Source: Ascidiella aspersa (taxonomy: Eukaryota). From it: a stretch of DNA of 64,000 bases. Shown here piece after piece: positions 6,071 to 22,300 of this stretch. Numbering within the stretch: the first letter of the stretch is position 1; each line of letters opens with the position of its first letter. Where the stretch lies: NCBI GenBank assembly GCA_963924565.1, contig OZ004613.1, positions 9,548,001 through 9,612,000 of the forward strand, read 5' to 3'. The translations under genes and the position numbers were made by a program. The notes under the pieces are model-generated. The model was not told the DNA's origin. It saw only the letters and a list, made by a program, of their open reading frames with translations, and made no database searches.

Positions 6071-9000
6071 TCTTCAGTCCTGCGCCCTACTGTTACTGTT
6101 ACTGTTAGGGTTGCCAGATTGTAAAGTAAATCTGTGGTGAAAATTCAGAAACAGTTTTTTTAATTTCAAAAATATACCAAGAATATACCAGTTTTCCAAA
6201 ATATACCAAACGAAAAATTCGCATATCAAACAGGTTTTAAATATACCAGATTTCTAGAATTTGGTATATAAATATACCAGTTGGCAAGCTTGGCCGAAAC
6301 CCGTGTTTTCAACAAATCGTGTCAGTGTTACTCATGCGTGACGAGACCCAGTGAGCCTTCTATGTAATTAGTATTCTATGGTTGTACATTGTGTTAATTT
6401 TTGTCATTGTAGTAATTTTTCCTTTGTCATTGTTTATCTGAAAGTCTAATTGTTGCGTCATAAGTAGCCATGAGACGACTGCTGCTTTTTAGTGTGACTG
6501 TCAGTAGTGATGGGATTCAGCCTGTTCGTAGTTCGCAACATTCGCTGGAACCTGGTTGTCATCCTGTTCTTGCAACTACTTCAATTATTTCCCGGAAATA
6601 TGACTTTTTGTAGCAGAACCGGCTGAAATGTATGACTTTTGTGATAGAACCGGCTGACAAAAATATTGAATCCCATCACTTCCTATATATGACGTCAATG
6701 TTGCTATTTTTTAGGCGCTTAGGCCTACTATTTATCATACAAAGGGGTGGGCAAATATTTTTTTACCGCTTGCCGCACGAGAAACATAAAATGATGTCGC
6801 AGGCCATCAAGAATACAGGATCTAAAAAATACGGAATTTTACGTCACACTTATGAGTAATAATCCTATAAAACAAGTACCGGTAAGTTAAAGGACATGTC
6901 ATTACGTTGAGAGTTCAGGCCTACAACTGAAGTCGATTTGAAGAAAAGACAAATGATGGCTAATTGGTGTCAAATACAAACTTTAATTCAGATTTAAAGG
7001 TGAACCAGGCGCATTACACACAGATCAAGTATATGTCGTCTAAATTGCTTGATATATTAGCATTCATCAAGTTGTCGGTAACGTAAACCCACCAAATCAA
7101 GGTTAAAATACGTACAAGTTTTACACAAAAAACTTACAATGGCCTTTTTTGCTTTTTGAGACTTTAAGTTGACTGTTTGTATTTTAAGGAAAATGAGCCA
7201 CATGTCGGATTAAATTGCTTGACGGCCCGCCGGCCATAGTTTACCCATGTCTGCACTTTTGGCCACTATAAAAGCTAAGCAGCCGCGGCGCCTTGGAGTG
7301 CCAATTCTAATGCTCAAGGTTGCCGAGATATTTGAGATTTTTAGGAATCTGATTTTTGTTCAATTGGTAAGCTTTTTAACAACTATTTGTGTACATTTAG
7401 AGACCATTACAACAAATGGCATTTTTCTTCATGTTTCGAATTACTATTTTTGAGGGGGGCCGTAAGCCATGAAAGGTTGAGAATCATTGGCTTAACCCCA
7501 CACGCGTTAAACAATAATTTGGGCCGCTGCAGATACAACGCATGGCAGCCCTAAGGCGCGAAAGTCTGATTGAAATTAAGGTAATATAGGCCTAAGCACT
7601 TGTATTTGAGAATGAAGACCAATTTGACATATTATAAAACCTAATAATCCAGTTTGGGAGGATCGTGGCCATACCACAATGAAAAAAATAAGCTATTTTA
7701 TATGGAAACTACGAAATAATTTTAACGTTTTATTTCAGTATTTCTTATAAGCTATTTTTGGTACAAATAATAGGAACACACATTATAAGACCTATTGTAA
7801 AGCAATAGTATCTATTGAAGCGTACAATTATCTAAAATGAAATATAATGAAAACCAGTATGGCATATAATAAAACCAAATACACACTTATATCTACGACG
7901 ACGAAGTCGTAACCTTATCGGAATAAATTCGAAAAAGTTCGGTTTATGATTTAAATGACCTTAAAGTTGCAATAGCCTTTAGAAGAGGATAACAGATTTT
8001 CAGTTGTCATTGTGAAATCGACGTTTGGACGGCGTAGTTCTTTGGCCCTGGACTGTCTGCCCTTGGGATGGGCTTAGAACAGGGTCAACAACCAACGACC
8101 TGCTGGTCTTATCCGACCCGCCAATTTTTTAGAAATTGAGCACAGGGCTATTCCTCATAATAATTGATTTTCATTCTTCTAGTATGATTGCCTGTCGGGT
8201 GAATCTTTTCAAACTTAAAGCGCCTTCAAATCACTGCTCGACTATTCCATAATTTGTGGCCGCCAAAGATTTTCGCCAAAACATTTTTGCCGAAATTCTG
8301 CGATAAATATGCCCAAAAGAACAATTTTTGTTGTAAAACGGCGATTTTTTACATCAAACATGACGCTGTCAAGCTTTTGTGTAAGCATTTCACGTCAAAG
8401 ATCTTTCGCGGGAAGGCAAATTGCACTCTGGACATACGAACGTCGTGAGTTACAAAACCCAATAAAAAAGAAGGACATACAACACTATGAAGCTTGTTGG
8501 ATGGAGGTTTAAGCTATAGTTACAAATAGACGAAAGTTTGACATTGGAAGAATATATAAGCTCATACAGAACGCAATCTGGCATCCCAGGAACTATTAAC
8601 AATAAATTTTAGTTTCAACAGTTGATACATCTGGATTATTTTACTGGTTTTCGCACGAAATCGTTTTATTATTTTAAATATGAACATAACATCAGTTAAA
8701 AGAGTTTAACGGTTTCCCTATTCAAATAGCATTCTAACATATCGCTCACCCTAAAAATATAAAGTCGTGTATTTAATTATGAACAGAACAAACGCATATT
8801 TTCCCCGACTTTTTGAATGTTATGAAAATCGTTTTCAATTACACAAAATTCTGATGGTGGCGTTCGACTATTGTTACTGATGTTATAGTAAAATATCCTA
8901 CCTAAAACCTCGCGTTTTAGCAACATTATTGTCAGTAAAAACCTATTAAAGCTCGTCGAGATATTTCGGACTTAATGTTTTTCCGCTTCTATAGATAAGA

Positions 9001-12935: not shown

Positions 12936-13960
12936 GTACGTCTGCTATTTGCATTGGCCATTAGTGCTTTTCGGCATCTTTCGAGTGGTGCTCTTTTTTC
13001 GTTTTGCACTCTACGATTCCAGTTTAAAAAGTAAACGCATTTTCGTATCACCATACACATGATTGGCTTTTAGCTTGACCTAACGTACCAACTAGCTTTT
13101 TAATTGGTTATAATAAAGCAGGCAGTTAGTTCAAGGCATGGCTTCTATCGACTTTTCGCTCTTCCTTACACTTCGGGCGTAGATCTATAGTTTTGATAAA
13201 AGCTCATACTCTTTTTGATTAGGAAAAGGTTGTTTAATTTATAAACAGTAGTGGAAAGAACTTTAAATTGTATCTGTATTTTTTTTCAATTACAATTTTA
13301 AGAAAATATAGCTTCCAACTAACATGGCATGCACAGTGCACACAATTTTTAAAACCATTAATTTTGTATAAATTTGGGTGTTTTTGGTGATTTATTTTTT
13401 CAATTGCTTGAACTTAGTTAACTTGCCTTTTGAGATATTTTTTAAATTGCAACCTTTTTTAAAGGTTTATTTGTATACAAGAAAATTCTCCACAGCATTT
13501 ACCATGCTATTTTCAAAGAAATTGATTACAGAAACTTGTTCACAAGATTCATAGAAAATCATTTTTTAAGGCCTAAATCAAAAATTTTTGAAATATTGTT
13601 GTGGTAGTCACACTTATCACCAGTTATCAAAAGCCGGTTTGATAATTTTACAACATTTAACTTGAAATATAAAAAGTGGGTAATTGTCATACTGAGCAAT
13701 GCTTTAATTTACTTGTATGGGTTTTCCTGTTGTTAAGGGTAACTTCAAAAATTGTAAAACTGGTTAAATATTTATGTTTTGCATGAGATACTTATGATTG
13801 CATGGAAAATAAGTTAATTATATTCTAGCTAACAATTTAGTTTCTTTTATTTGTTTAATGATTTTTGCATGATTACTTTTACCCTAATCAAATCTCAATG
13901 CCTGATTAACTTACACTGCATTTATAGTTGCCTACTTGGCTGCAAAGTAGCCATTTTATA

Positions 13961-14572
13961 ATGTTTTTGGGTGTTTTGTGTCATAGAGTTGTGCCGAAAG
14001 CTAGTCGTGTAGCACTAGGTGGCAGCATTCCAAGCAAGTTTCACAAGTCAGCAGCAATGGACGATTCCAAAAAGCCATGGAAAAGTGCAAAGTCAATCTA
14101 TGACTTTACGGTGATGGACATTCACGAGCAGGAAGTGTCCCTGCAAAAATACAATGGCCTGGTTGGCTTGGTCGTCAATGTGGCGTCCGAATGAGGCCTG
14201 ACCAAGGTCAACTACACTCAGCTGCAGGAACTGCACGAAAAATACTCACCCCAAGGTCTTCGCATCCTCGCCTTTCCCTGCAACCAGTTCAACAGCCAGG
14301 AGCCAGGCTCTAACGAGGAAATTGACAAGTTCGCTAAAGAAAAATATGGTGTACAGTTTGACATGTTCGCCAAGGTTAAGGTGAATGGCGACAACGCCGC
14401 TCCCCTCTTCAAGTACCTAAAGTCGCACAAGAATTGCCCGGGCACCCTGACAAACGCCATCAAGTGGAACTTTTCCAAGTTTTTGATTGATCGCCAAGGT
14501 ATCCCACAAAAGCGCTATGGACCGAAAACCACTCCATTTGAATTTGAAGAGGACATTAAAAATCTCCTCTAG
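13961..14572 (+). CDS. GPX4: Phospholipid-hydroperoxide glutathione peroxidase (GPx4/PHGPx-like selenoprotein), intronless CDS, 203 aa, Sec at TGA 14192-14194
   Basis: ORFs 13928-14194 and 14363-14572 are one frame separated only by TGA in the active-site motif VVNVASE-U-GLT. Downstream motifs ILAFPCNQF..QEPG and IKWNFSKFLID..G...RYGP are present. There is no oligomerisation loop (TLTNAIKWNF), as in the monomeric GPx4 class. ATG 13961 gives a basic presequence; a second ATG is at 14057. A splice acceptor lies at 13926-13927. Confidence 0.95.
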
Positions 14573-14740
14573 TATTTCAAAGTGTTGTGTCCTGTCTTTC
14601 TTTTTTTCATATATAAATATGTATACTTAATTTTTCCTTTGATCCGAATTCAGTGACAAGGTACTCGTGATTTGTTTTGTGAATTATACAAGCAGTTCAA
14701 TTTTTTGATTTGCTTCCGAACCTCTTCATTATTGTGGTAT

Positions 14741-14810
14741 TGCAGCCTTTGTATGATGACTGATTTACAAACCATTTAAATGGTGAAATTAGTCTGATGT
14801 GAGGATTGCG
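14741..14810 (+). promoter_or_regulatory. SECIS element (type II) in GPx4 3' UTR
   Basis: ATGAT core at 14753-14757, stem GACTGATTTAC/GTGAAATTAGTC, unpaired AAA, ministem CCAT-TTAA-ATGG, 3' TGAT at 14795-14798, and lower helix GCAGCCTT/GAGGATTGC. Confidence 0.92.
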
Positions 14811-14977
14811 TGTAATGGTGGTTCATCTGGTTAGTGAGTATACCAGGTGTTCCAGCTTTCATTGCGTTCTCAAGGTTGTTTTATCAAAGTTTAATGTTGA
14901 TGTTTTTTCGTTTTATGTTAGGAATTTCGTTTTAGACATTATAACAAACTTTAAGGTCAAAAACCTGTGCATATAGT

Positions 14978-17900
14978 ATGATCTTCAAATTAATCTTCAA
15001 CAACCAGGTGTGTACCATTATTAAAATATACTAGAATAACTTAGTTTCCTTGTATGTAATTTAGCTTTAAAAATTTAAAATAAGGATAACTACCCAGTGA
15101 CCATAAAGGGGAATTTTGACAACAATTTGATATTTTAAGCTTTAAAAACACATTTTAATGCTAATTGTTAGGTTATTATTTTTTTTCATAAACTGTTATT
15201 CTCTAAAGGTAAAAAAGTTTAACATGTAAATTACGTAAAGTTTGTTAGTCTGTAATAATACCAAAATGTTTTAAAAATACCACTATAAAGAGTTATTGAT
15301 TTTTTGACAGGTATTAAGAAATGCTTCCTGTTTTACGCGAAACATTACGGTGAGTGCACCGTGTGCAGCGAGCAGTAAGGTTTACGAACTAAGGAAGTAT
15401 CTCATACGACCAAGTGAGGTTGGCAAGTTTACCAAGCTGTCTACAGAACACTTTTACTTGAGAACAAAGGTGTCAAAGTTAAGCGGTTACTGGACAAGTG
15501 AAATTGGTTCCAATCTCAACCAAGCGATTCATATATGGGAATATGGTATGCTTAAAAATAGCTTAGGATAAACCTATCTAAACATATTGCTAAACGTTTT
15601 TATGGCACCCAAAAACATATATAGGCCTATTTTATTCCTTTTGAAGTGGGCTTAACATCAATTTTATTAGTTCAAAATATACCTGTATGTGTGTATTCCA
15701 ACCAGTGAATATTGGATTCCTAGCTTTATCTAAATGAGACAATCCAATTCTTTATGTGTTGTTACTTGAGAAAACTACATCTTTAAAACTAGATTTTGCC
15801 ATGTGTTTTTTTAAATTTTGCCCACAAAGCTAAATTTCCACAAACCCTTATAAACATGACAAATACCAAAACATTTTAAAAATATGACAACTACTATTTG
15901 TCCATTTTTTCTCTAATCAGCTGCTTTACCTGTGCATGTCAGTGTTCTAATATTTACCATGCTCTGGCATCATACCATGTAAATTTAAACCACACATAGC
16001 ACAAGGTTTTATTAATATCATATACTTAACAATAACCAACTTCTCCATTAAAAAGCATTTCTTTTTAAATAAAACTGTAATAATTTCTAATAATTTGGTA
16101 AAAGTATTAAAAATCTGAAAAAGTATTGACAAAAAAATATACTTAGCTTTCTTTTCTGGATTGGTTGTGTTAAAATTCATCAATTTGCCCAACAGTGATT
16201 GCTTAACACATGTGTAATCTAATTAAATACAAAACGGCAGTGTGTGTAATGTACAGGGTAAATGCAGTCAGCCTTTGAAAAGTAAATGCCCATTTTAGAC
16301 AATTTGCAGCATCGCGCAACAGCCCGTGCAACCTTGGCAAAGGATCAGGCATGGCTTAGTGATTATGTTGCACCTATTTTTCCGCTATTTGTTCAACAAG
16401 AGAACTGTCTTATGTACATGCCACAATGGTGCAACGAAATGACAGATCACAACAAGAAAAATGGTAAGTTTTTTTTTTAGTTTTTTTTAGTTAGATCTTA
16501 AATTGGCGCTGGTCTTGAATCCTACCACAATTATTAAATCAACGTACAATATTTGGGTTAGGGTGCGAGTTTGGGTGTGGGTGGAGTCAAGTGTTATTAT
16601 ATTCATTATTTAATAATAATACTTGACCCACCCTACCCCAAACGCTAACTCGCACCCTAACCTAAATAATGTGCATTGTGGTAGGATTCTAGACCAGCGC
16701 CCTTAAATTTAAAGAATATAGTCAAACAAAATGTTAAGCTTTTAATAATAGTAGAAACAAGTTTGAACGAAACACCAGAATTTGATTCGACAACTTTTTA
16801 TATTGAAGAATGTACACAAATGTCTTATAGGTTGATTGTTTGATCAACTTGTTTACTTCAATTGCTTAGGTGTTTATGAGCTGGATAAATTTGAGATGAA
16901 AGCTGGTGGCCCATCCGTGTGGGAAACGTCGCTGCAGTCATTGTTCGACGCAAAAGTCAATCTTGGTGGCTCGGATCTGATTGGTGTTTGGTTCACCGAA
17001 ATCGGAGATCTCAATACGGGTAAAACAAATCCTTAGAGCCGCTGACAATGCAATTACTGTGGAATTTAAGTTCACTTTTCAACTTGGTGTATTCCGTTTA
17101 TCAGAATACTTGAGCACTGCCTAAAGGCGTCGGTTTTCAACCCGCTTTGTTTTTGATTGTTACTTTGATCTACCCTATATCGCCCTTGCAATTAGATATG
17201 AGCAGTTTAGTCAAGTGTTTATTCCAGGTATAGAACACTTTTAACAAATAGCACACATCGTATTCTAAACGCATCTATTAAAATGCCACCATTGGATCGA
17301 AATTGGACTTTACTTTACTTAAAATATGCAACAAGCTCGTATAAAGCGCAATAAAACGCTTTCAGCTATAGGAAGTTTGCGTAACTTTCGTTGTAGATGA
17401 TTCTTTAAAGTTATGCACATCGTAACCTTAATTCTTTTAAGTCTTGAGACTAAAAAGGTTTTCTCAAAACGCAACCATATGGGTCAAGCGCATTTTTTGG
17501 TATTTACGTGGTTAAAATAGGCAAAAAATGGAGGAAATTACCTGTGCCCAGTTTGTAAAAAAGTTGGCGGGTCGTACGTTGCCGAACCCTACTTTAACGC
17601 ATCCAAACTAAAACTCGCAGTTTAACTGAAATGCGCTAAGCCGAGGGCATTTTGAAAACCACTGGATTGACAAAGGTGTTTTTAATTTAGCTTTTACCAT
17701 TGAATTCTGCCGGATATTGACTGAAAGTGTTGTTGTTCTTCGCAGTTTGAAAACCTCTGGTTTAGCAAAGGTGTTTTCTACTTAGCTTTTACCATTGAAT
17801 CGAATTCTGCCGGATATTGACTGAAAAGTGCTGTTGTTTTGTGCAGTTCACGCGGTATGGCGCTTTGACGACTATGCAGCTCGCAGTATGAACAAGGCAA

Positions 17901-19331
17901 AAGCAAGATCGTCCGCGGTCGTCGCTCAAAAAGGTTTGTGAAGTTGTAGTATGATGTGAGACCTCGCTTTAACTTCATAGCAACTGCGAGAGTCTGTATT
18001 GCAGTTGTGCCGATTCAAAGACTTCACACACAACGAAAAACGTTTGTTTTCCGATTGGCAGGTAAATTTAGTTTTATGGGCTTAATCAATGGAAAAAATT
18101 CGCAACACGCAAGGGTTTTTAAGGCGACATTTTATATCGACGCCTTAGTCGATTCAAACTTTTGGCGCTTTAAAATTCGCTCGGCAAGCAGCGTTGTAAC
18201 AGTTTTTTATGATTTATTTCTACTTAGCCTAAAACCATTGAGTTTAATATGGACTTTGGTGCTCTTTCTACGTCGAACTACAACCTCCGGGCGTTGTGCT
18301 CATAAAGTTTGGGTTTCATTTCAAAAGCACTGCGTATGATTATATATATTCAAAGTTTTTTCAAAGCTTTGTCGTGAAAGTAAAAATGTCGTTTTATGAT
18401 ATGCCATTAAGCAATGTAGCTATAGTTAGATAACAATATTCTCCAGCGGCACACTTATATGTGTCACGTTTTACATGGCCACGACCACCGCCCGGTTTAA
18501 GACGGATTAAATAAAAAGGGTTTGGAATCAGTTCTTCAAATCCGATCTATCCAAGAACGCACTTCAAAATGGTTTTAAAATTGTAAACCGCATCTCTCTG
18601 TTAAATCGTGCCCAGAACGTTTTTTAACCGCCAGTGTCAAAAAAATGTTCCAATTACTTTCCTTTGCGAATCCGTCTTAAGCAAATAGACCAATTTTGGC
18701 TTGTATGTCGTTATTAGTCTTTGTTACCGTGTATTTTTGCCACCCTACAAATCACAGTGACTTCGCTAGTTCGCGCCGTGGCCTTTTGCTATTTGCTTTT
18801 CAGGGCGCGACCCTAAGTTACCGACAGGTTGGCAAAAATAGGTTTCGTCTCGTATTTGGGTCGAAAGTCCGTTTGTGGTCGCCGTTTTAAGGGACAGATA
18901 GGATAATTTACTTTTTTCGCAACAAGGCCAATGTAGCCTGTTTTGCGTGTCTTGCAAATCCTCGTATCAGGACTTATTAGATTACCATCTCATATATTTT
19001 CCCGAGAGCCAAATGAAACCATCAGGAATACCCCGAGGTCTGATGTATAAGTTGCATAAAAAGTGAAACGAAGACCTCTAAAGATTTGGCATTGGAAATA
19101 GATAATTCATTGTTATTTTATACTCAAAAGTGCGTCGCGGGCCACACAAAATGTGCTCATGGACCGCGTGTTTGCGACCTTTGGTCTATAAAGTAGCCTC
19201 GCCGGTTAACAACGTCGACGGTTAAAAATGGGCTTATCATCCATGTTTGCGCAGAAGGCGACGTGGTACAGCACTTGATCAAGCAGAGCACTGTTCTGAT
19301 GCTGCCCACGGCCTGGTCCACACTTCAGTGA
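14978..19331 (+). CDS. NIPSNAP3A: NipSnap family protein (NIPSNAP3-like), 6 coding exons, 247 aa
   Basis: Exons 14978-15007, 15311-15545, 16299-16463, 16870-17019, 17847-17933, 19255-19331, all GT-AG and phase-consistent. Motifs VYELRKY..GYWTSEIG.NLNQAIHIWEYDNLQHR, GVYEL..GVWFTEIGDLNTVHAVW and C-terminal LMLPTAWSTLQ. The 10-codon first exon is the least certain, and the 3A/3B assignment is not resolvable. Confidence 0.9.
16505..16701. mobile_element. Palindromic MITE in NIPSNAP intron 3
   Basis: GGCGCTGGTCTTGAATCCTACCACAAT / ATTGTGGTAGGATTCTAGACCAGCGCC plus inner inverted arms. Other copies at 50777-50971 and about 59795-59934. Confidence 0.85.
17651..17846 (+). repeat. Tandem duplication (95 + 101 bp) of the NIPSNAP intron-4 3' end
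   Basis: Two copies of tttgaaaacc.ctgg...aaaggtgttt...ttagcttttaccattgaat...tctgccggatattgactgaaa.gtg.tgttgtt...gcag. Confidence 0.9.
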
Positions 19332-22300
19332 ATTACTTCCGACATTGCCCACATCGGTGCGAGTTCGTTTCACGAAGGTGGGCCGCTCACATCGCTTTCC
19401 CTTGTTGTGCAAAGCCCTATGTTATTTAGAGATTGTTTTCTGGTGTTTTGTATTATGTAAAACGCGTGCATCACAACTCAAATAAGTCGCTCCACCCACA
19501 TTTATGTGCTGCGGGCTTTCGTTCACTATAGCGCTGCATATAGACTCTGCGATAATTTTCTGGTTTCCTGTATCATATAGAATTGCCAATTCGCCTGCTC
19601 TATAAAATACCGTTCTTTTTACATGCATGCTCATTTTTTGCCAAATAATTCGTTATGCAGAGGGTTGTAGCTAATGAGATTTTTTGTGGTGTCCTGTGGT
19701 GTTTATTTGCCCCCAAACACTTCCCATCGTTATGCAGCGGCCTTTTTACTTTAGGTTATGTAAAAGTATAATTCCACCCATATGCATTAGTTCCTATTTT
19801 GAAAACCAGCTGAACTGAATGTGGAAATGTTTTCTGACAACCATTCTGTAAAAGTATAATTTCTTGCCACCCACATACATTACCAGTTTCTAAAGAATAT
19901 AGGAAGTTAATGCGTAGGCGTATTACCGTTTTCCGCTAATTCTGCGATATGTGTACTGTTTGGTCCACACACAAATTTTATATATGCTAAATTTTATTGA
20001 AAAGTCAGTAACCATCTTGCAATATTTCCTTGCCAAGTAAAAAAATGAATTTAGGATTAGTGTTTGCTTTAATAGAAAGCGTTTTGCTTAAAAAACAAAA
20101 ATCAAGTACCGTAACAATCATAGTGATTTTTATTAAGGTTTGTTCATTTTAAATTGCAAAGGTGTCGCTTATTTTGTATTTTAATGCAATTCTAGCAATC
20201 CAATTAGACCACGTGGTGTACTTTAAGCAAGTGCGTTGCTTAATGGCATCTCGCAAAGAAGTTTTAAGCCCTTCAAATAATCATGTAGTATGTACCCCTT
20301 ATTCCTAAAATTGCAACGGTAAAACATACACTTTGTTTAGTAAACTGTGAAATTACCAGCCTCAAAATTATATTTTTTATCATTTTAATAAGAATGTCAA
20401 ATTACAAGCACCCTTTTAAAGTTGTTGCTATTTCCCATGTCAGTCACTTAGCCTTGCCTCCATTGTATTGTGTGATATTACCAACTCCTGCCAATTTCCG
20501 GCAGTGTTATCTTCATTCTTTTAAATTCTGTGTTTTTCCCAATCATTTAATGTTTGTTCAATCAAATCGTTAGTGTGCAATTCAGTAATTTCGTGTTTTC
20601 ATTATGTGCCATTTTGCGTAAAGTGTCTTAACTCTTAACAGTCGTACTATTTTTTACCAAATGCAATATCACGTGTCTTATCGCACATTAAACAATCAGT
20701 CATCCCGCCAAAGCTCCATGTGCTTGTTTAACATTCGAGTTCCTATCGCATATGAAACAAAGGCAACCGCACACATGCCTGTCTGTTTGGCGTGCGCAAA
20801 CGCCTGTTGTTTGCTTACTGGTTTGAAAACCGGCACGCCAATGTTGGATACTGTCTGCTTTGCTCTACTAAATCTCCTAATTCAGATAATGGCGCGGCAA
20901 ATAGAAACCACGTTCATGATTTAAACAAAACATTAGCTTTATTCTATGTTTTGCACTGTTTTTTCTGCTGTATCATGATTTATAGTAAATCTGATTTTTA
21001 ATAACATCATCCAACTATATAGTTTAAGCACGACTCTTGAAAATACAGCTATCGTGGACATGGTTTCTCACAATAGTGTAATGAAATTATTAATGACAAA
21101 TAATAATTTAAAAAACCTGAGCCCAAAACGATGGTTAACAACTACCATGGGAGCTGGTTTGGATTAATTTTATGCCTGGTAGCATCAGTTTGTATAATGA
21201 TAAAATAAGTGTAGTGTTTGCATATGTTGAGATATCAATAAAATTTAGTGTAACCCAACCCTAATACAGATAAATAACCGATGCTTCAAATTGTAAGTAG
21301 GCAAATTGACGAGGCAAGGATGACTTGACAATATTACTTCCTTAACTGGATAGTCGTTTCAAATTTGACAAGGTGCTCTAAAGTAGTCGCACTTTGGACC
21401 CTGGTAGTGTGCTGTGTGTTGAATGACGTGCTGACGGTTGCATTCAGAGTGCTTTCCTATCTGTTAAAACACTCTTCACTGAATAATTGAGTGGCGACGG
21501 GCGTCCCTTTGCACGCTCGATTGACCTTGAAAATCCTATCGGCTATTAATGTGCAGAGTGGGGTCTAAATTTAAGCGGAGGTGACATTTACGTAATAGAC
21601 ACACGGGTTGCGCAAAACTGTTTACCTAAATTATTCGTTCTAAGGTCTTATAAAGTGGCTTTAACGTTTGAAGAAGGCCTTTGGCATCCATTAACGAAAT
21701 AAACTGGTTTACAGACAGGCAGAGCACTAAAAAGAAATGTATTGATATGTTTTACAATATATTTCAATCCATGATTGCATGTACTACATTGCATGTACTA
21801 CAAGCTATAAGTTATAAAGAGCAATGACGAAAAGTCAAAGCGTCAGATAGTAATACAGATATCGATTTTGGGAAAAATTCACAATTGAATGCTCTTGACA
21901 TGCATTATCTAGTAACAGATGTTGTTACAGGGTCGACTTACGGATTTTCAAAAGGTCCTATATTTTACTATTCGAAAAGCTTCAGAAGGAGTTGATTTGT
22001 TTTACTTTGTATAGTACCGCCATATAAAATCAATGACTTGTTTCAAAGCCATTGTGGGTTTAAGCACATAACACGCACAGGCAGGCGGTGACGTCACATC
22101 GGCCAGCCTGCTTCATCTGAATAGCCGGGTTTCGACTCGGTAACAATATGGAGCAAGATGCTACACCATCAAAATACACAATTAAAACAGCAATCAATAC
22201 TTCGGGTCGTTAGGATTCACAAACCACTAACAAAAGAAGCTTTGTCCGCTGTAATAAACAGACAGCAAGGCAGAAGCTGCTGTTATATAACGAAACGTTA

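What the first reader, a model, noticed from the sequence alone, without database searches (positions are those of the whole stretch)
13928..19331. GPx4-NIPSNAP dicistronic arrangement: an intronless selenoprotein gene whose SECIS-bearing 3' UTR runs into the next gene's acceptor
Seen: only 405 bp separate the GPx4 stop (14572) from the NIPSNAP ATG (14978). That gap holds the SECIS and then a U-rich tract ending in AG acceptors (14921, 14935), with no AATAAA and little room for a promoter. Known: tunicate operons are resolved by SL trans-splicing at acceptors abutting the upstream 3' UTR, and vertebrate GPX4 has multiple introns. Inference: a processed GPx4 copy carrying its own SECIS landed between the promoter and NIPSNAP, creating an operon or shared-first-exon locus that co-expresses two probably mitochondria-targeted proteins.
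Basis: partly seen in the sequence, partly recalled or inferred. Interest (0 to 1): 0.75.

Follow-up and report, generated by a model that had tools for sequence, protein, structure and literature searches.

The report
Sea-squirt GPx4–NIPSNAP candidate operon
A one-exon selenoprotein gene (GPx4) sits 405 bases in front of a six-exon NIPSNAP gene on the same strand of a sea-squirt genome, which looks like an ordinary sea-squirt operon rather than a new kind of locus.

Summary
A GPx4-type gene with an uninterrupted coding sequence (in-frame TGA 14192-94, stop 14570-72) is followed by a SECIS (14743-14812), a U-rich tract with AG at 14920-21 and 14934-35, and the NIPSNAP ATG at 14978. There is no AATAAA or ATTAAA in the 405-bp gap.

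The genome is an ascidian carrying 573 copies of the Ciona-type spliced-leader motif.

RNA evidence is indirect:
- GPx4 RNA is about 100 times more abundant than NIPSNAP RNA.
- Its 5' boundary is at 13988, beside a tandem AG, which excludes the upstream ATG 13961.
- Its coverage fades through the gap (8 reads deep at 14894) and is zero from 14950.
- One assembled RNA contig runs unbroken from the GPx4 coding sequence through the gap into correctly spliced NIPSNAP.
- No leader-bearing read could be seen, because a repeat swamped the output tables.

The only other GPx4-type gene in this genome, and a 73%-identical gene on a metagenome contig, share the layout: one exon, SECIS, acceptor, then the next gene's ATG. 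Single-exon first genes are already known to dominate Ciona operons.

Verdict: probable new member of a known kind (confidence 0.6). The retrocopy story is untestable here. A conserved hairpin after the SECIS with a splice-donor-like loop is the one unexpected feature.

The parts
13957..13962 (+). TATA-like hexamer, 31 nt before the RNA 5' boundary at 13988
   Evidence: Sequence. Ciona TATA boxes sit at -32 to -29 (PMC4691747, passages read). However, the dinucleotide at 13987-88 is AG, not the preferred pyrimidine-purine.
13961..14056 (+). In-frame upstream extension (ATG 13961, 32 codons). It is basic with no acidic residue, so it is a possible presequence of a minor long isoform.
   Evidence: Translation. 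A comparable 30-codon extension, also starting Met-Phe and without acidic residues, is in L018. The main RNA boundary at 13988 excludes it.
13964..13988 (+). U/G-rich tract ending in a tandem AG-AG (13985-86 and 13987-88). The RNA 5' boundary is at 13988: a candidate trans- or cis-splice acceptor, or a TSS.
   Evidence: table 6: 14 molecules end at 13988, with depth beside it of 43. Depth is 0.83 in 13750-13949 against 93 in 13950-14149. Sequence.
14057..14572 (+). GPx4-type selenoprotein coding sequence, short form: 171 codons, Sec TGA at 14192-94, stop at 14570-72
   Evidence: Pfam GSHPx on both pieces. The best solved relatives are phospholipid-hydroperoxide GPx at about 1e-44, against GPx1 at 8e-21. 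RNA depth is 93-217.
14743..14812 (+). SECIS element
   Evidence: Rfam SECIS_1 at 30.8 bits, E 0.0044. Fold energy is -22 kcal/mol, z -2.4. SECIS_1 is also the only or best match at the same place in the paralogue (25.1 bits) and in L018 (20.8 bits).
14824..14849 (+). Hairpin with an 8-bp stem and a 10-nt loop (14832-41). The loop holds a 5'-splice-site-like GTGAGT at 14834-39. It is conserved in register with the SECIS in the paralogue.
   Evidence: fold; the shared 9-mer lies 40 nt after the SECIS 3' core in both genes; 12 of 14 identical in register, reached by 4 of 5000 shuffles; two stem pairs are changed on both sides between the window and L006.
14890..14935 (+). U-rich tract with AG at 14920-21 and 14934-35: candidate trans-splice acceptors of NIPSNAP and distal end of the GPx4 RNA
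   Evidence: Sequence. RNA depth is 8 at 14894 and 0 in 14950-15149. Three ATGs lie just upstream (14893-14917) and none lies between the AGs and ATG 14978.
14978..15007 (+). NIPSNAP exon 1 (ATG plus 9 codons)
   Evidence: X3 record 18 joins 15004 to 15308, which is equivalent to 15007/15311.
15311..15545 (+). NIPSNAP exon 2
   Evidence: Pfam NIPSNAP, E 1.9e-11. X3 record 18.
16299..16463 (+). NIPSNAP exon 3
   Evidence: Pfam NIPSNAP, E 0.0017, continuing the profile from exon 2. X3 record 18 piece 16298-16462.
16870..17019 (+). NIPSNAP exon 4 (start of the second NIPSNAP domain)
   Evidence: Pfam NIPSNAP, E 4.9e-5. The length fits the unlisted 236 letters of X3 record 18.
17847..17933 (+). 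NIPSNAP exon 5
   Evidence: Frame and splice sites. The length fits X3 record 18. No Pfam match when searched alone.
19255..19331 (+). NIPSNAP exon 6, coding part (stop at 19329-31). The RNA contig runs on to 19453.
   Evidence: X3 record 18 piece 19253-19453. Frame.

Best explanation
This is an ascidian operon of the kind already described in Ciona. One promoter lies upstream of GPx4. It is either more than 670 nt upstream, with an outron removed at the AG-AG at 13985-88, or directly at the TATA-like site at 13957. It drives a primary transcript through the one-exon GPx4 gene, its SECIS and the gap into NIPSNAP.

Most transcripts are cut and tailed soon after the SECIS, near 14821, with a tail of longer forms up to the AG acceptors. 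These become abundant GPx4 mRNA that starts translation at ATG 14057.

A minority read through. On those, the 16-nt spliced leader is joined at AG 14921 or 14935. That removes three upstream ATGs and gives a capped NIPSNAP mRNA whose first ATG is 14978.

Shown: the gene models, the SECIS, the SL genes, RNA across the gap, and the RNA boundary at the acceptor stretch. Inferred: the common promoter and the leader on NIPSNAP.
For: 1. The genes are on the same strand with 405 bp between coding sequences.

2. The genome holds 573 matches to the Ciona SL plus GT, in 584-bp tandem arrays, against 0 and 1 for the control. The SL string itself stands in PMC1488885.

3. In the stranded RNA run X4, + strand depth falls step by step: 164 (14604), 94 (14705), about 60 (14747), about 22 (14821), 8 (14894), and 0 in 14950-15149 (tables 2, 3, 4, 6). 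The last RNA boundary therefore lies in 14895-14949, the stretch that holds both AGs. Ciona operons behave this way: the upstream mRNA ends at the downstream acceptor (PMC1488885, passages read).

4. In run X3, one 1497-letter contig is colinear over 14345-15004 and then spliced through all NIPSNAP exons to 19453. X3 behaves as RNA, with spliced contigs and no depth in NIPSNAP intron 1. The gap is therefore covered by RNA where intron 1 is not (tables 2, 8).

5. There is no AATAAA or ATTAAA in the gap. In Ciona, 16 of 18 operon upstream genes lack it (PMC1488885).

6. The first gene has one coding exon. In Ciona, 60% of operons have a single-exon 5'-most gene (PMC2760879, section 10 read).

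7. The same layout recurs. The C3 paralogue is single-exon Sec-GPx4, SECIS, U-rich AG, then the ATG of a CRAL_TRIO gene 630 bp after the stop. Metagenome contig L018 has the next ATG-plus-donor exon 552 bp after the stop.

8. X3 record 17 runs colinear from 14343 back past 13550 by another 232 letters. RNA therefore exists upstream of 13988 in that sample.
Against: - No read carrying the leader was seen at 13988, 14922 or 14936.
- X4 has no read at all on NIPSNAP exon 1.
- A contig across two genes does not prove a single molecule.
- Most GPx4 RNA seems to end about 100 nt before the acceptors, whereas Ciona operons typically have no intercistronic DNA (median 1 bp; PMC7986045, passages read).
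- A strong donor-like GTGAGT at 14834 lies upstream of the acceptors. In Ciona, a strong paired donor goes with cis-splicing rather than trans-splicing (PMC11155486, abstract only).
- The 5' boundary at 13988 is one base off from what an SL read would give at the 13988|13989 junction, and a TATA-like hexamer sits at -31. GPx4 may therefore start at its own TSS.
- Steady-state levels differ about 100-fold.
- Synteny with NIPSNAP in another species could not be shown: no NIPSNAP exon was found in the 1.7 kb left on L018.
Confidence: 0.6

Rival explanations
1. Two independent genes that are merely close. GPx4 has its own TATA promoter (13957) and ends in the gap. NIPSNAP starts from its own weak promoter inside the GPx4 3' UTR or the gap, with or without later trans-splicing.
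For: - A TATA-like hexamer sits 31 nt before the 13988 boundary, matching the Ciona -32 to -29 rule.
- Expression differs about 100-fold.
- TATA-like stretches occur at about 14610 and 14940.
- No SL read was seen.
- Most GPx4 RNA ends about 100 nt before the acceptors.
Against: - The X3 contig needs RNA that bridges the whole gap.
- A start upstream of the AGs would leave three upstream ATGs in the leader unless it is trans-spliced.
- There is very little room: 156 nt between the 14821 pile and the ATG.
- The same tight layout is seen in three GPx4-type genes with at least two different downstream genes.
- The dinucleotide at 13987-88 is AG, not pyrimidine-purine.
Confidence: 0.2
2. A shared-first-exon locus, like the cholinergic VAChT/ChAT locus (recalled, not checked). 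A short non-coding 5' exon far upstream is cis-spliced either to the acceptor at 13988 (GPx4 mRNA) or to 14921/14935 (NIPSNAP mRNA, with GPx4 lying in its first intron).
For: - The 5' boundary at 13988 lies beside an AG.
- The exact base fits a leader ending in a non-A plus G better than the SL, which would align one base further (my reading).
- RNA is present upstream of 13550 in X3.
Against: - No such joint was listed, although the table was cut.
- X3 contigs 17 and 18 are colinear through both acceptors. That fits a short clipped leader better than a long alternative path. This is my inference about how the assembler behaves, recalled and not tested.
- In an organism with hundreds of SL genes, unpaired acceptors are normally trans-spliced (PMC1488885).
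Confidence: 0.1
3. A composite-exon unit. The conserved GTGAGT at 14834 is a real donor. Read-through RNA is cis-spliced from 14833 to 14922 or 14936, giving a spliced two-ORF RNA. The choice between tailing after the SECIS and splicing decides the output.
For: - The donor-like motif is conserved in register in two paralogues: 12 of 14 identical, reached by 4 of 5000 shuffles.
- Acceptors lie 88 and 102 nt downstream.
- The 3' pile at 14821 lies 12 nt before the motif.
Against: - X3 record 18 keeps 14834-14921 unspliced.
- X4 has depth 8 at 14894, inside the would-be intron, and 0 on exon 1.
- A second cistron after a 171-codon ORF would not be translated by scanning (general knowledge).
- The motif is absent from the closer relative L018.
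Confidence: 0.1

Closest known systems
Ciona SL-resolved operons with a single-exon 5'-most gene (Satou 2006 PMC1488885; Satou 2008 PMC2760879)
   Same: - Same-strand pair in an ascidian with the same 16-nt SL.
- The first gene has one coding exon.
- No AATAAA before the upstream 3' end.
- The longest upstream RNA stops in the acceptor stretch.
- The two genes' levels are not coordinated.
   Different: - Most GPx4 RNA appears to end about 100 nt before the acceptors, whereas Ciona operons usually have none (median 1 bp, PMC7986045).
- The upstream gene is a selenoprotein, so its SECIS must be kept in the mRNA.
- Trans-splicing of the downstream gene is not shown here.
C. elegans operons with an intercistronic region of about 100 nt (as described in the papers read)
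   Same: There is a spacer of about 100 nt between the main upstream 3' end and the downstream acceptor. The spacer is U-rich and contains a hairpin.
   Different: Tunicates have one SL, not a dedicated SL2. Any role of the hairpin or donor-like loop in leader recruitment is pure conjecture.
Vertebrate GPX4 (best solved relatives; gene structure and isoforms recalled)
   Same: - Monomer-sized Sec enzyme.
- Sec at codon 46 of the short form.
- SECIS in the 3' UTR.
- An upstream in-frame ATG that could add a presequence.
   Different: - The coding sequence has no intron, against seven exons in vertebrates (recalled).
- The switch between long and short form would be made by the place of the acceptor or TSS between the two ATGs.
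Kinetoplastid selenoprotein genes inside polycistronic units (PMC1557815, search listing only)
   Same: A SECIS-bearing gene is transcribed as part of a polycistron resolved by SL trans-splicing.
   Different: There, all genes are polycistronic. Here it is a metazoan two-gene unit.

Membership tests
Ciona-type SL-resolved operon | Adjacent genes on one strand in an organism with SL RNA genes | tested here: met
   for the gene pair; 573 SL+GT matches against 0 and 1 for the control.
Ciona-type SL-resolved operon | Less than 100 bp between the upstream mRNA 3' end and the downstream trans-splice acceptor (operational definition, PMC2760879) | tested here: inconclusive
   The main 3' piles are at 14747 and 14821, 100 nt before AG 14921. 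The last RNA boundary falls in 14895-14949, around the AGs. The poly(A) letters were not visible.
Ciona-type SL-resolved operon | The downstream gene's mRNA carries the SL at an acceptor before its ATG | tested here: inconclusive
Ciona-type SL-resolved operon | A polycistronic precursor exists | tested here: inconclusive
   X3 record 18 bridges the GPx4 CDS, the gap and spliced NIPSNAP, and intron 1 is uncovered. A contig is not a single molecule.
Selenocysteine GPx4 (PHGPx) | GSHPx fold with an in-frame UGA at the catalytic position, and closest to PHGPx | tested here: met
   Pfam matches on both sides of the TGA. PDB matches: PHGPx about 1e-44, GPx7/8 about 2e-21, GPx1 8e-21.
Selenocysteine GPx4 (PHGPx) | SECIS in the 3' UTR | tested here: met
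   SECIS_1 at 30.8 bits, E 0.0044, below Rfam's own 35-bit cut-off, 171 nt after the stop. It lies inside the covered RNA.
NIPSNAP family | NIPSNAP domains (Pfam PF07978) | tested here: met
Exons 2, 3 and 4 each match when searched alone. Exons 2 and 3 cover one domain and exon 4 starts a second.
Retrocopy (processed gene) | No introns, a poly(A) remnant, target-site duplications and an intron-bearing parent elsewhere | tested here: not met
   Only intronlessness is met. There is no A-tract after the 3' end. There is no intron-bearing GPx4-type gene among the 5 matches in the genome. Target-site duplications were not searched.

The most novel reading that the evidence does not exclude
The hairpin that follows the SECIS (14824-49) is a working part of the locus. 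Its loop is a near-perfect 5' splice-site sequence, and it is also complementary (8 and 7 nt) to the coding sequence 50-51 nt after the Sec codon in both GPx4 paralogues.

By binding U1 or pairing with the coding region, it could set where the GPx4 mRNA ends. It would thereby set how much transcription reads through to the downstream cistron, or it could help Sec decoding. That would tie selenoprotein 3'-end formation to operon output.
Probability: 0.1. Interest if true: 0.7.

Novelty: new member of a known kind. Interest (0 to 1): 0.35.

Why it matters
If confirmed, this adds a selenoprotein to the list of first cistrons in ascidian operons. It also shows that both GPx4-type genes of one species occupy that position in front of unrelated genes. 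That bears on the open question raised by Satou et al. 2008 of why single-exon genes dominate the first position of Ciona operons.

The locus has practical use as well. The SECIS must stay in the upstream mRNA, so the 3' end cannot be placed freely. That makes it a clean test case for how upstream 3' ends are formed without AAUAAA in tunicate operons.

Otherwise it is an ordinary locus for this group of animals.

Tried and rejected
- Pfam with wrong exon frames failed. I corrected it after rebuilding the exon phases.
- PDB sequence searches with NIPSNAP exons 2 and 4 found nothing, so the NIPSNAP subfamily was not assigned.
- Rfam found no SECIS in 46 kb around the GPx7-like gene on C1 and the C4 tandem GPx genes. 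A motif scan found no copy of the loop motif beside a SECIS-like pattern there.
- The loop-to-coding-sequence pairing idea gets 2 of 3. L018 has the coding 7-mer at the same place, but no matching loop and no donor-like hexamer in its 3' region. A shared 9-mer anywhere between the two gaps is common by chance (mean 3.7 in 500 shuffles). Only the in-register position counts.
- A tblastn of the six NIPSNAP exon peptides, kept as separate records, against L018 gave no convincing match (best E 0.054 over 9 residues). Synteny is untested.
- Paper searches for retrogene-plus-operon-plus-outron, Ciona single-exon retrotransposition, NIPSNAP plus operon (0 papers) and SECIS plus operon plus spliced leader (2 papers, neither on tunicates by title) gave no report of this arrangement in the held library.
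- The gene structures of the Ciona GPx genes (PMC2874816) and the KH operon lists are in supplements or external databases that I could not see. They may already show this pair.
- I considered and rejected a nearby third cistron after NIPSNAP: there is no ORF of 70 aa or more with a plausible gene within 10 kb.
Full report
**What is there.** The window is G000 contig C7:9548001-9612000 of a 308.6-Mb genome. An earlier scan note calls the genome ascidian.

On the + strand an open frame runs from 13928. In-frame ATGs are at 13961 and 14057, an in-frame TGA is at 14192-94, and the stop is at 14570-72. The pieces before and after the TGA both match Pfam GSHPx, with E 1.7e-4 and 5e-31. The C-terminal piece is closest to solved phospholipid-hydroperoxide GPx chains at about 1e-44. 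GPx7/8 score about 2e-21 and GPx1 scores 8e-21. From ATG 14057 the product has 171 codons with Sec at codon 46.

Rfam places a SECIS_1 match at 14743-14812 with 30.8 bits, E 0.0044. This is under the curated 35 bits. The stretch folds at -22 kcal/mol, z -2.4.

The NIPSNAP gene starts at ATG 14978. I derive six exons: 14978-15007, 15311-15545, 16299-16463, 16870-17019, 17847-17933 and 19255-19331, giving 247 codons. Exons 2, 3 and 4 match Pfam NIPSNAP.

The gap is 405 bp. It has no AATAAA or ATTAAA. It ends in a T-rich tract with AG at 14920-21 and 14934-35.

**The organism trans-splices.** The 16-nt Ciona SL stands in PMC1488885. Followed by GT, it has 573 matches in G000, many in 584-bp tandem arrays on C3. 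The control pattern has 0 and 1.

**RNA evidence (one call, 5,991 letters, four runs).**

- X1 and X2 behave as DNA, with even depth.
- X3 behaves as RNA, with spliced contigs and no depth in NIPSNAP intron 1.
- X4 is a stranded raw-read RNA run of which about 6 in 100 reads were read.

All X4 reads on both genes have the first mate on the - strand, meaning RNA from the + strand.

- GPx4 depth is 93-217 per bin. NIPSNAP exon sites have 0-2 reads and its bins 0.5-3.3.
- Fourteen molecules end at 13988, with depth beside it of 43. The bin upstream has depth 0.83.
- Along the 3' side the depth is 164 at 14604, 94 at 14705, about 60 at 14747 (13 molecule ends), about 22 at 14821 (7 ends), 8 at 14894, and 0 in the bin 14950-15149.
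- Eight 151-nt reads cover 14894 and none reaches 14950. If the RNA ran on, each would stay short of 14950 with a chance of about 0.37. A real boundary in 14895-14949 is therefore likely. This is my rough estimate, not a tool result. That stretch holds both AGs.
- X3 record 18 (1497 letters) is colinear over 14345-15004 and then spliced at exactly the modelled junctions through to 19453.
- X3 record 17 is colinear from 14343 back to 13550 and runs 232 letters further.

I could not see any leader or poly(A) letters. The joint and loose-end tables were filled by a repeat at 16505-16701, with 81 and 662 rows not shown.

**Reading of the 5' end.** Position 13988 is the second G of a tandem AG-AG (13985-88) that ends a U/G-rich tract. 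That looks like an acceptor, and RNA upstream in X3 fits an outron.

Against this, an SL read joined at 13988|13989 should align one base further. A TATA-like hexamer also sits at -31, which is where Ciona TATA boxes lie (PMC4691747). However, the start dinucleotide would be AG rather than the preferred pyrimidine-purine.

Either way, ATG 13961 is outside the main mRNA. The 32-codon extension it would add is basic and has no acidic residue. A similar 30-codon extension exists in L018. A minor long isoform is possible but not shown.

**Relatives.** G000 has five matches to the GPx piece.

- The C3 match is 62% identical and is also a single uninterrupted Sec-containing frame. It has a SECIS_1 match at 25.1 bits. 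A U-rich tract with AGs follows, and 630 bp after the stop comes the ATG of a multi-exon CRAL_TRIO gene.
- The C1 match is GPx7-like.
- The two C4 matches are distant, at 38-42%.

One metagenome contig, L018, carries a 73%-identical single-frame Sec-GPx4. It has a weak SECIS_1 match at 20.8 bits. A strong U-rich acceptor follows, and an ATG-plus-donor exon lies 552 bp after the stop. No NIPSNAP exon was found in the 1.7 kb that remain on the contig. L018 is 62% identical to the C3 gene, so C3 is the older paralogue.

All three genes lack introns. The loss of introns, or a retro-event, is therefore old, and no intron-bearing parent survives in this genome.

**Comparison with what is known.**

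- Ciona operons are same-strand pairs that usually abut without intercistronic DNA. The upstream mRNA ends at the downstream acceptor, and 16 of 18 lack AATAAA (PMC1488885, passages).
- About a fifth of Ciona genes are in operons, and in 60% of operons the first gene has a single exon (PMC2760879, section 10).
- The median intercistronic distance is 1 bp (PMC7986045, passages).

The present locus fits this kind in layout, in the missing AATAAA, in its single-exon first gene, and in the place where the longest GPx4 RNA stops. It differs in that most GPx4 RNA seems to end about 100 nt earlier, just after the SECIS. I rate it a probable operon at 0.6. The rivals are independent promoters (0.2), a shared first exon (0.1) and a composite spliced unit (0.1).

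**An unexpected detail.** Forty nucleotides after the 3' core of the SECIS, both G000 paralogues carry the same 9-mer, with 12 of 14 identical in register. Only 4 of 5000 shuffles reached this.

- In the window it is the loop of an 8-bp hairpin at 14824-49.
- Between the window and L006, two stem pairs are changed on both sides and still pair.
- The loop reads as a strong 5' splice site, with GT at 14834-35.
- It is also complementary to the coding sequence 50-51 nt after the Sec codon, over 8 nt in the window (14242-49) and 7 nt in the paralogue.
- L018 has the coding 7-mer at the same place but lacks the loop and the donor-like hexamer.
- The 3' pile at 14821 lies 3 nt before this hairpin.

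I could not find those elements. I report this as a lead, not a finding.

**Verdict.** The retrocopy and co-expression parts are not supported by what could be tested. The main GPx4 product is the short form. This is a new member of a known kind, of moderate to low interest, with one small open question: the hairpin after the SECIS.

Noticed in passing
window 16505-16701 (NIPSNAP intron 3): A MITE-like element with 27-nt terminal inverted repeats (96% complementary) and an inner 42-nt inverted pair. Its word depth in the DNA runs is up to 250,000-390,000 against about 50-100 nearby, so it is extremely abundant in this genome. It produced weak miRNA-family matches in Rfam and swamped the read tables.
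   Followed up: partly
window 17647-17846 (just before NIPSNAP exon 5): A tandem duplication of about 95-100 bp (copies 86% and 96% alike) that duplicates the acceptor region. A second AG-ended copy lies about 100 nt upstream of the acceptor that is used.
   Followed up: partly
G000 C3:5.22-5.45 Mb (L012, L013 and many unlisted places): Hundreds of SL RNA gene candidates in tandem arrays with a 584-bp period, on both strands, carrying the exact Ciona-type 16-nt leader followed by GT.
   Followed up: no
L006 7790-8929 (G000 C3:18947789-18948928): A second single-exon Sec-GPx4 gene with a SECIS (8676-8740), the same post-SECIS loop motif (8763-71), and a CRAL_TRIO gene starting 630 bp after its stop. 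This is a second candidate operon with a selenoprotein first cistron.
   Followed up: partly
window 14824-14849 and 14242-14249; L006 8763-8771: A conserved post-SECIS hairpin whose loop is splice-donor-like and complementary to the coding sequence 50-51 nt after the Sec codon. The coding 7-mer is identical at that place in all three GPx4-type genes examined, but the loop is present in only two.
   Followed up: partly
L018 (metagenome contig JGI24158J21664_10021184), 2866-3931: An ascidian-like single-exon Sec-GPx4 on a metagenome contig, with an acceptor directly before its upstream ATG. In that species the long, presequence-like form may therefore be the default. Several copies of a short repeat lie in the following intron.
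   Followed up: partly
window 14109: All 160 of 160 X4 RNA reads show A where the assembly has C. This changes codon 18 of the short form from Thr to Lys, and L018 has Lys at the aligned place. The DNA runs X1-X3 show the reference letter, so it is probably an allele rather than editing.
   Followed up: no
window 12940-13130: Three inverted CCAAT-like boxes (ATTGG) within about 170 bp, roughly 900-1000 nt upstream of GPx4. This is a candidate site for the shared promoter if 13988 is an acceptor.
   Followed up: no
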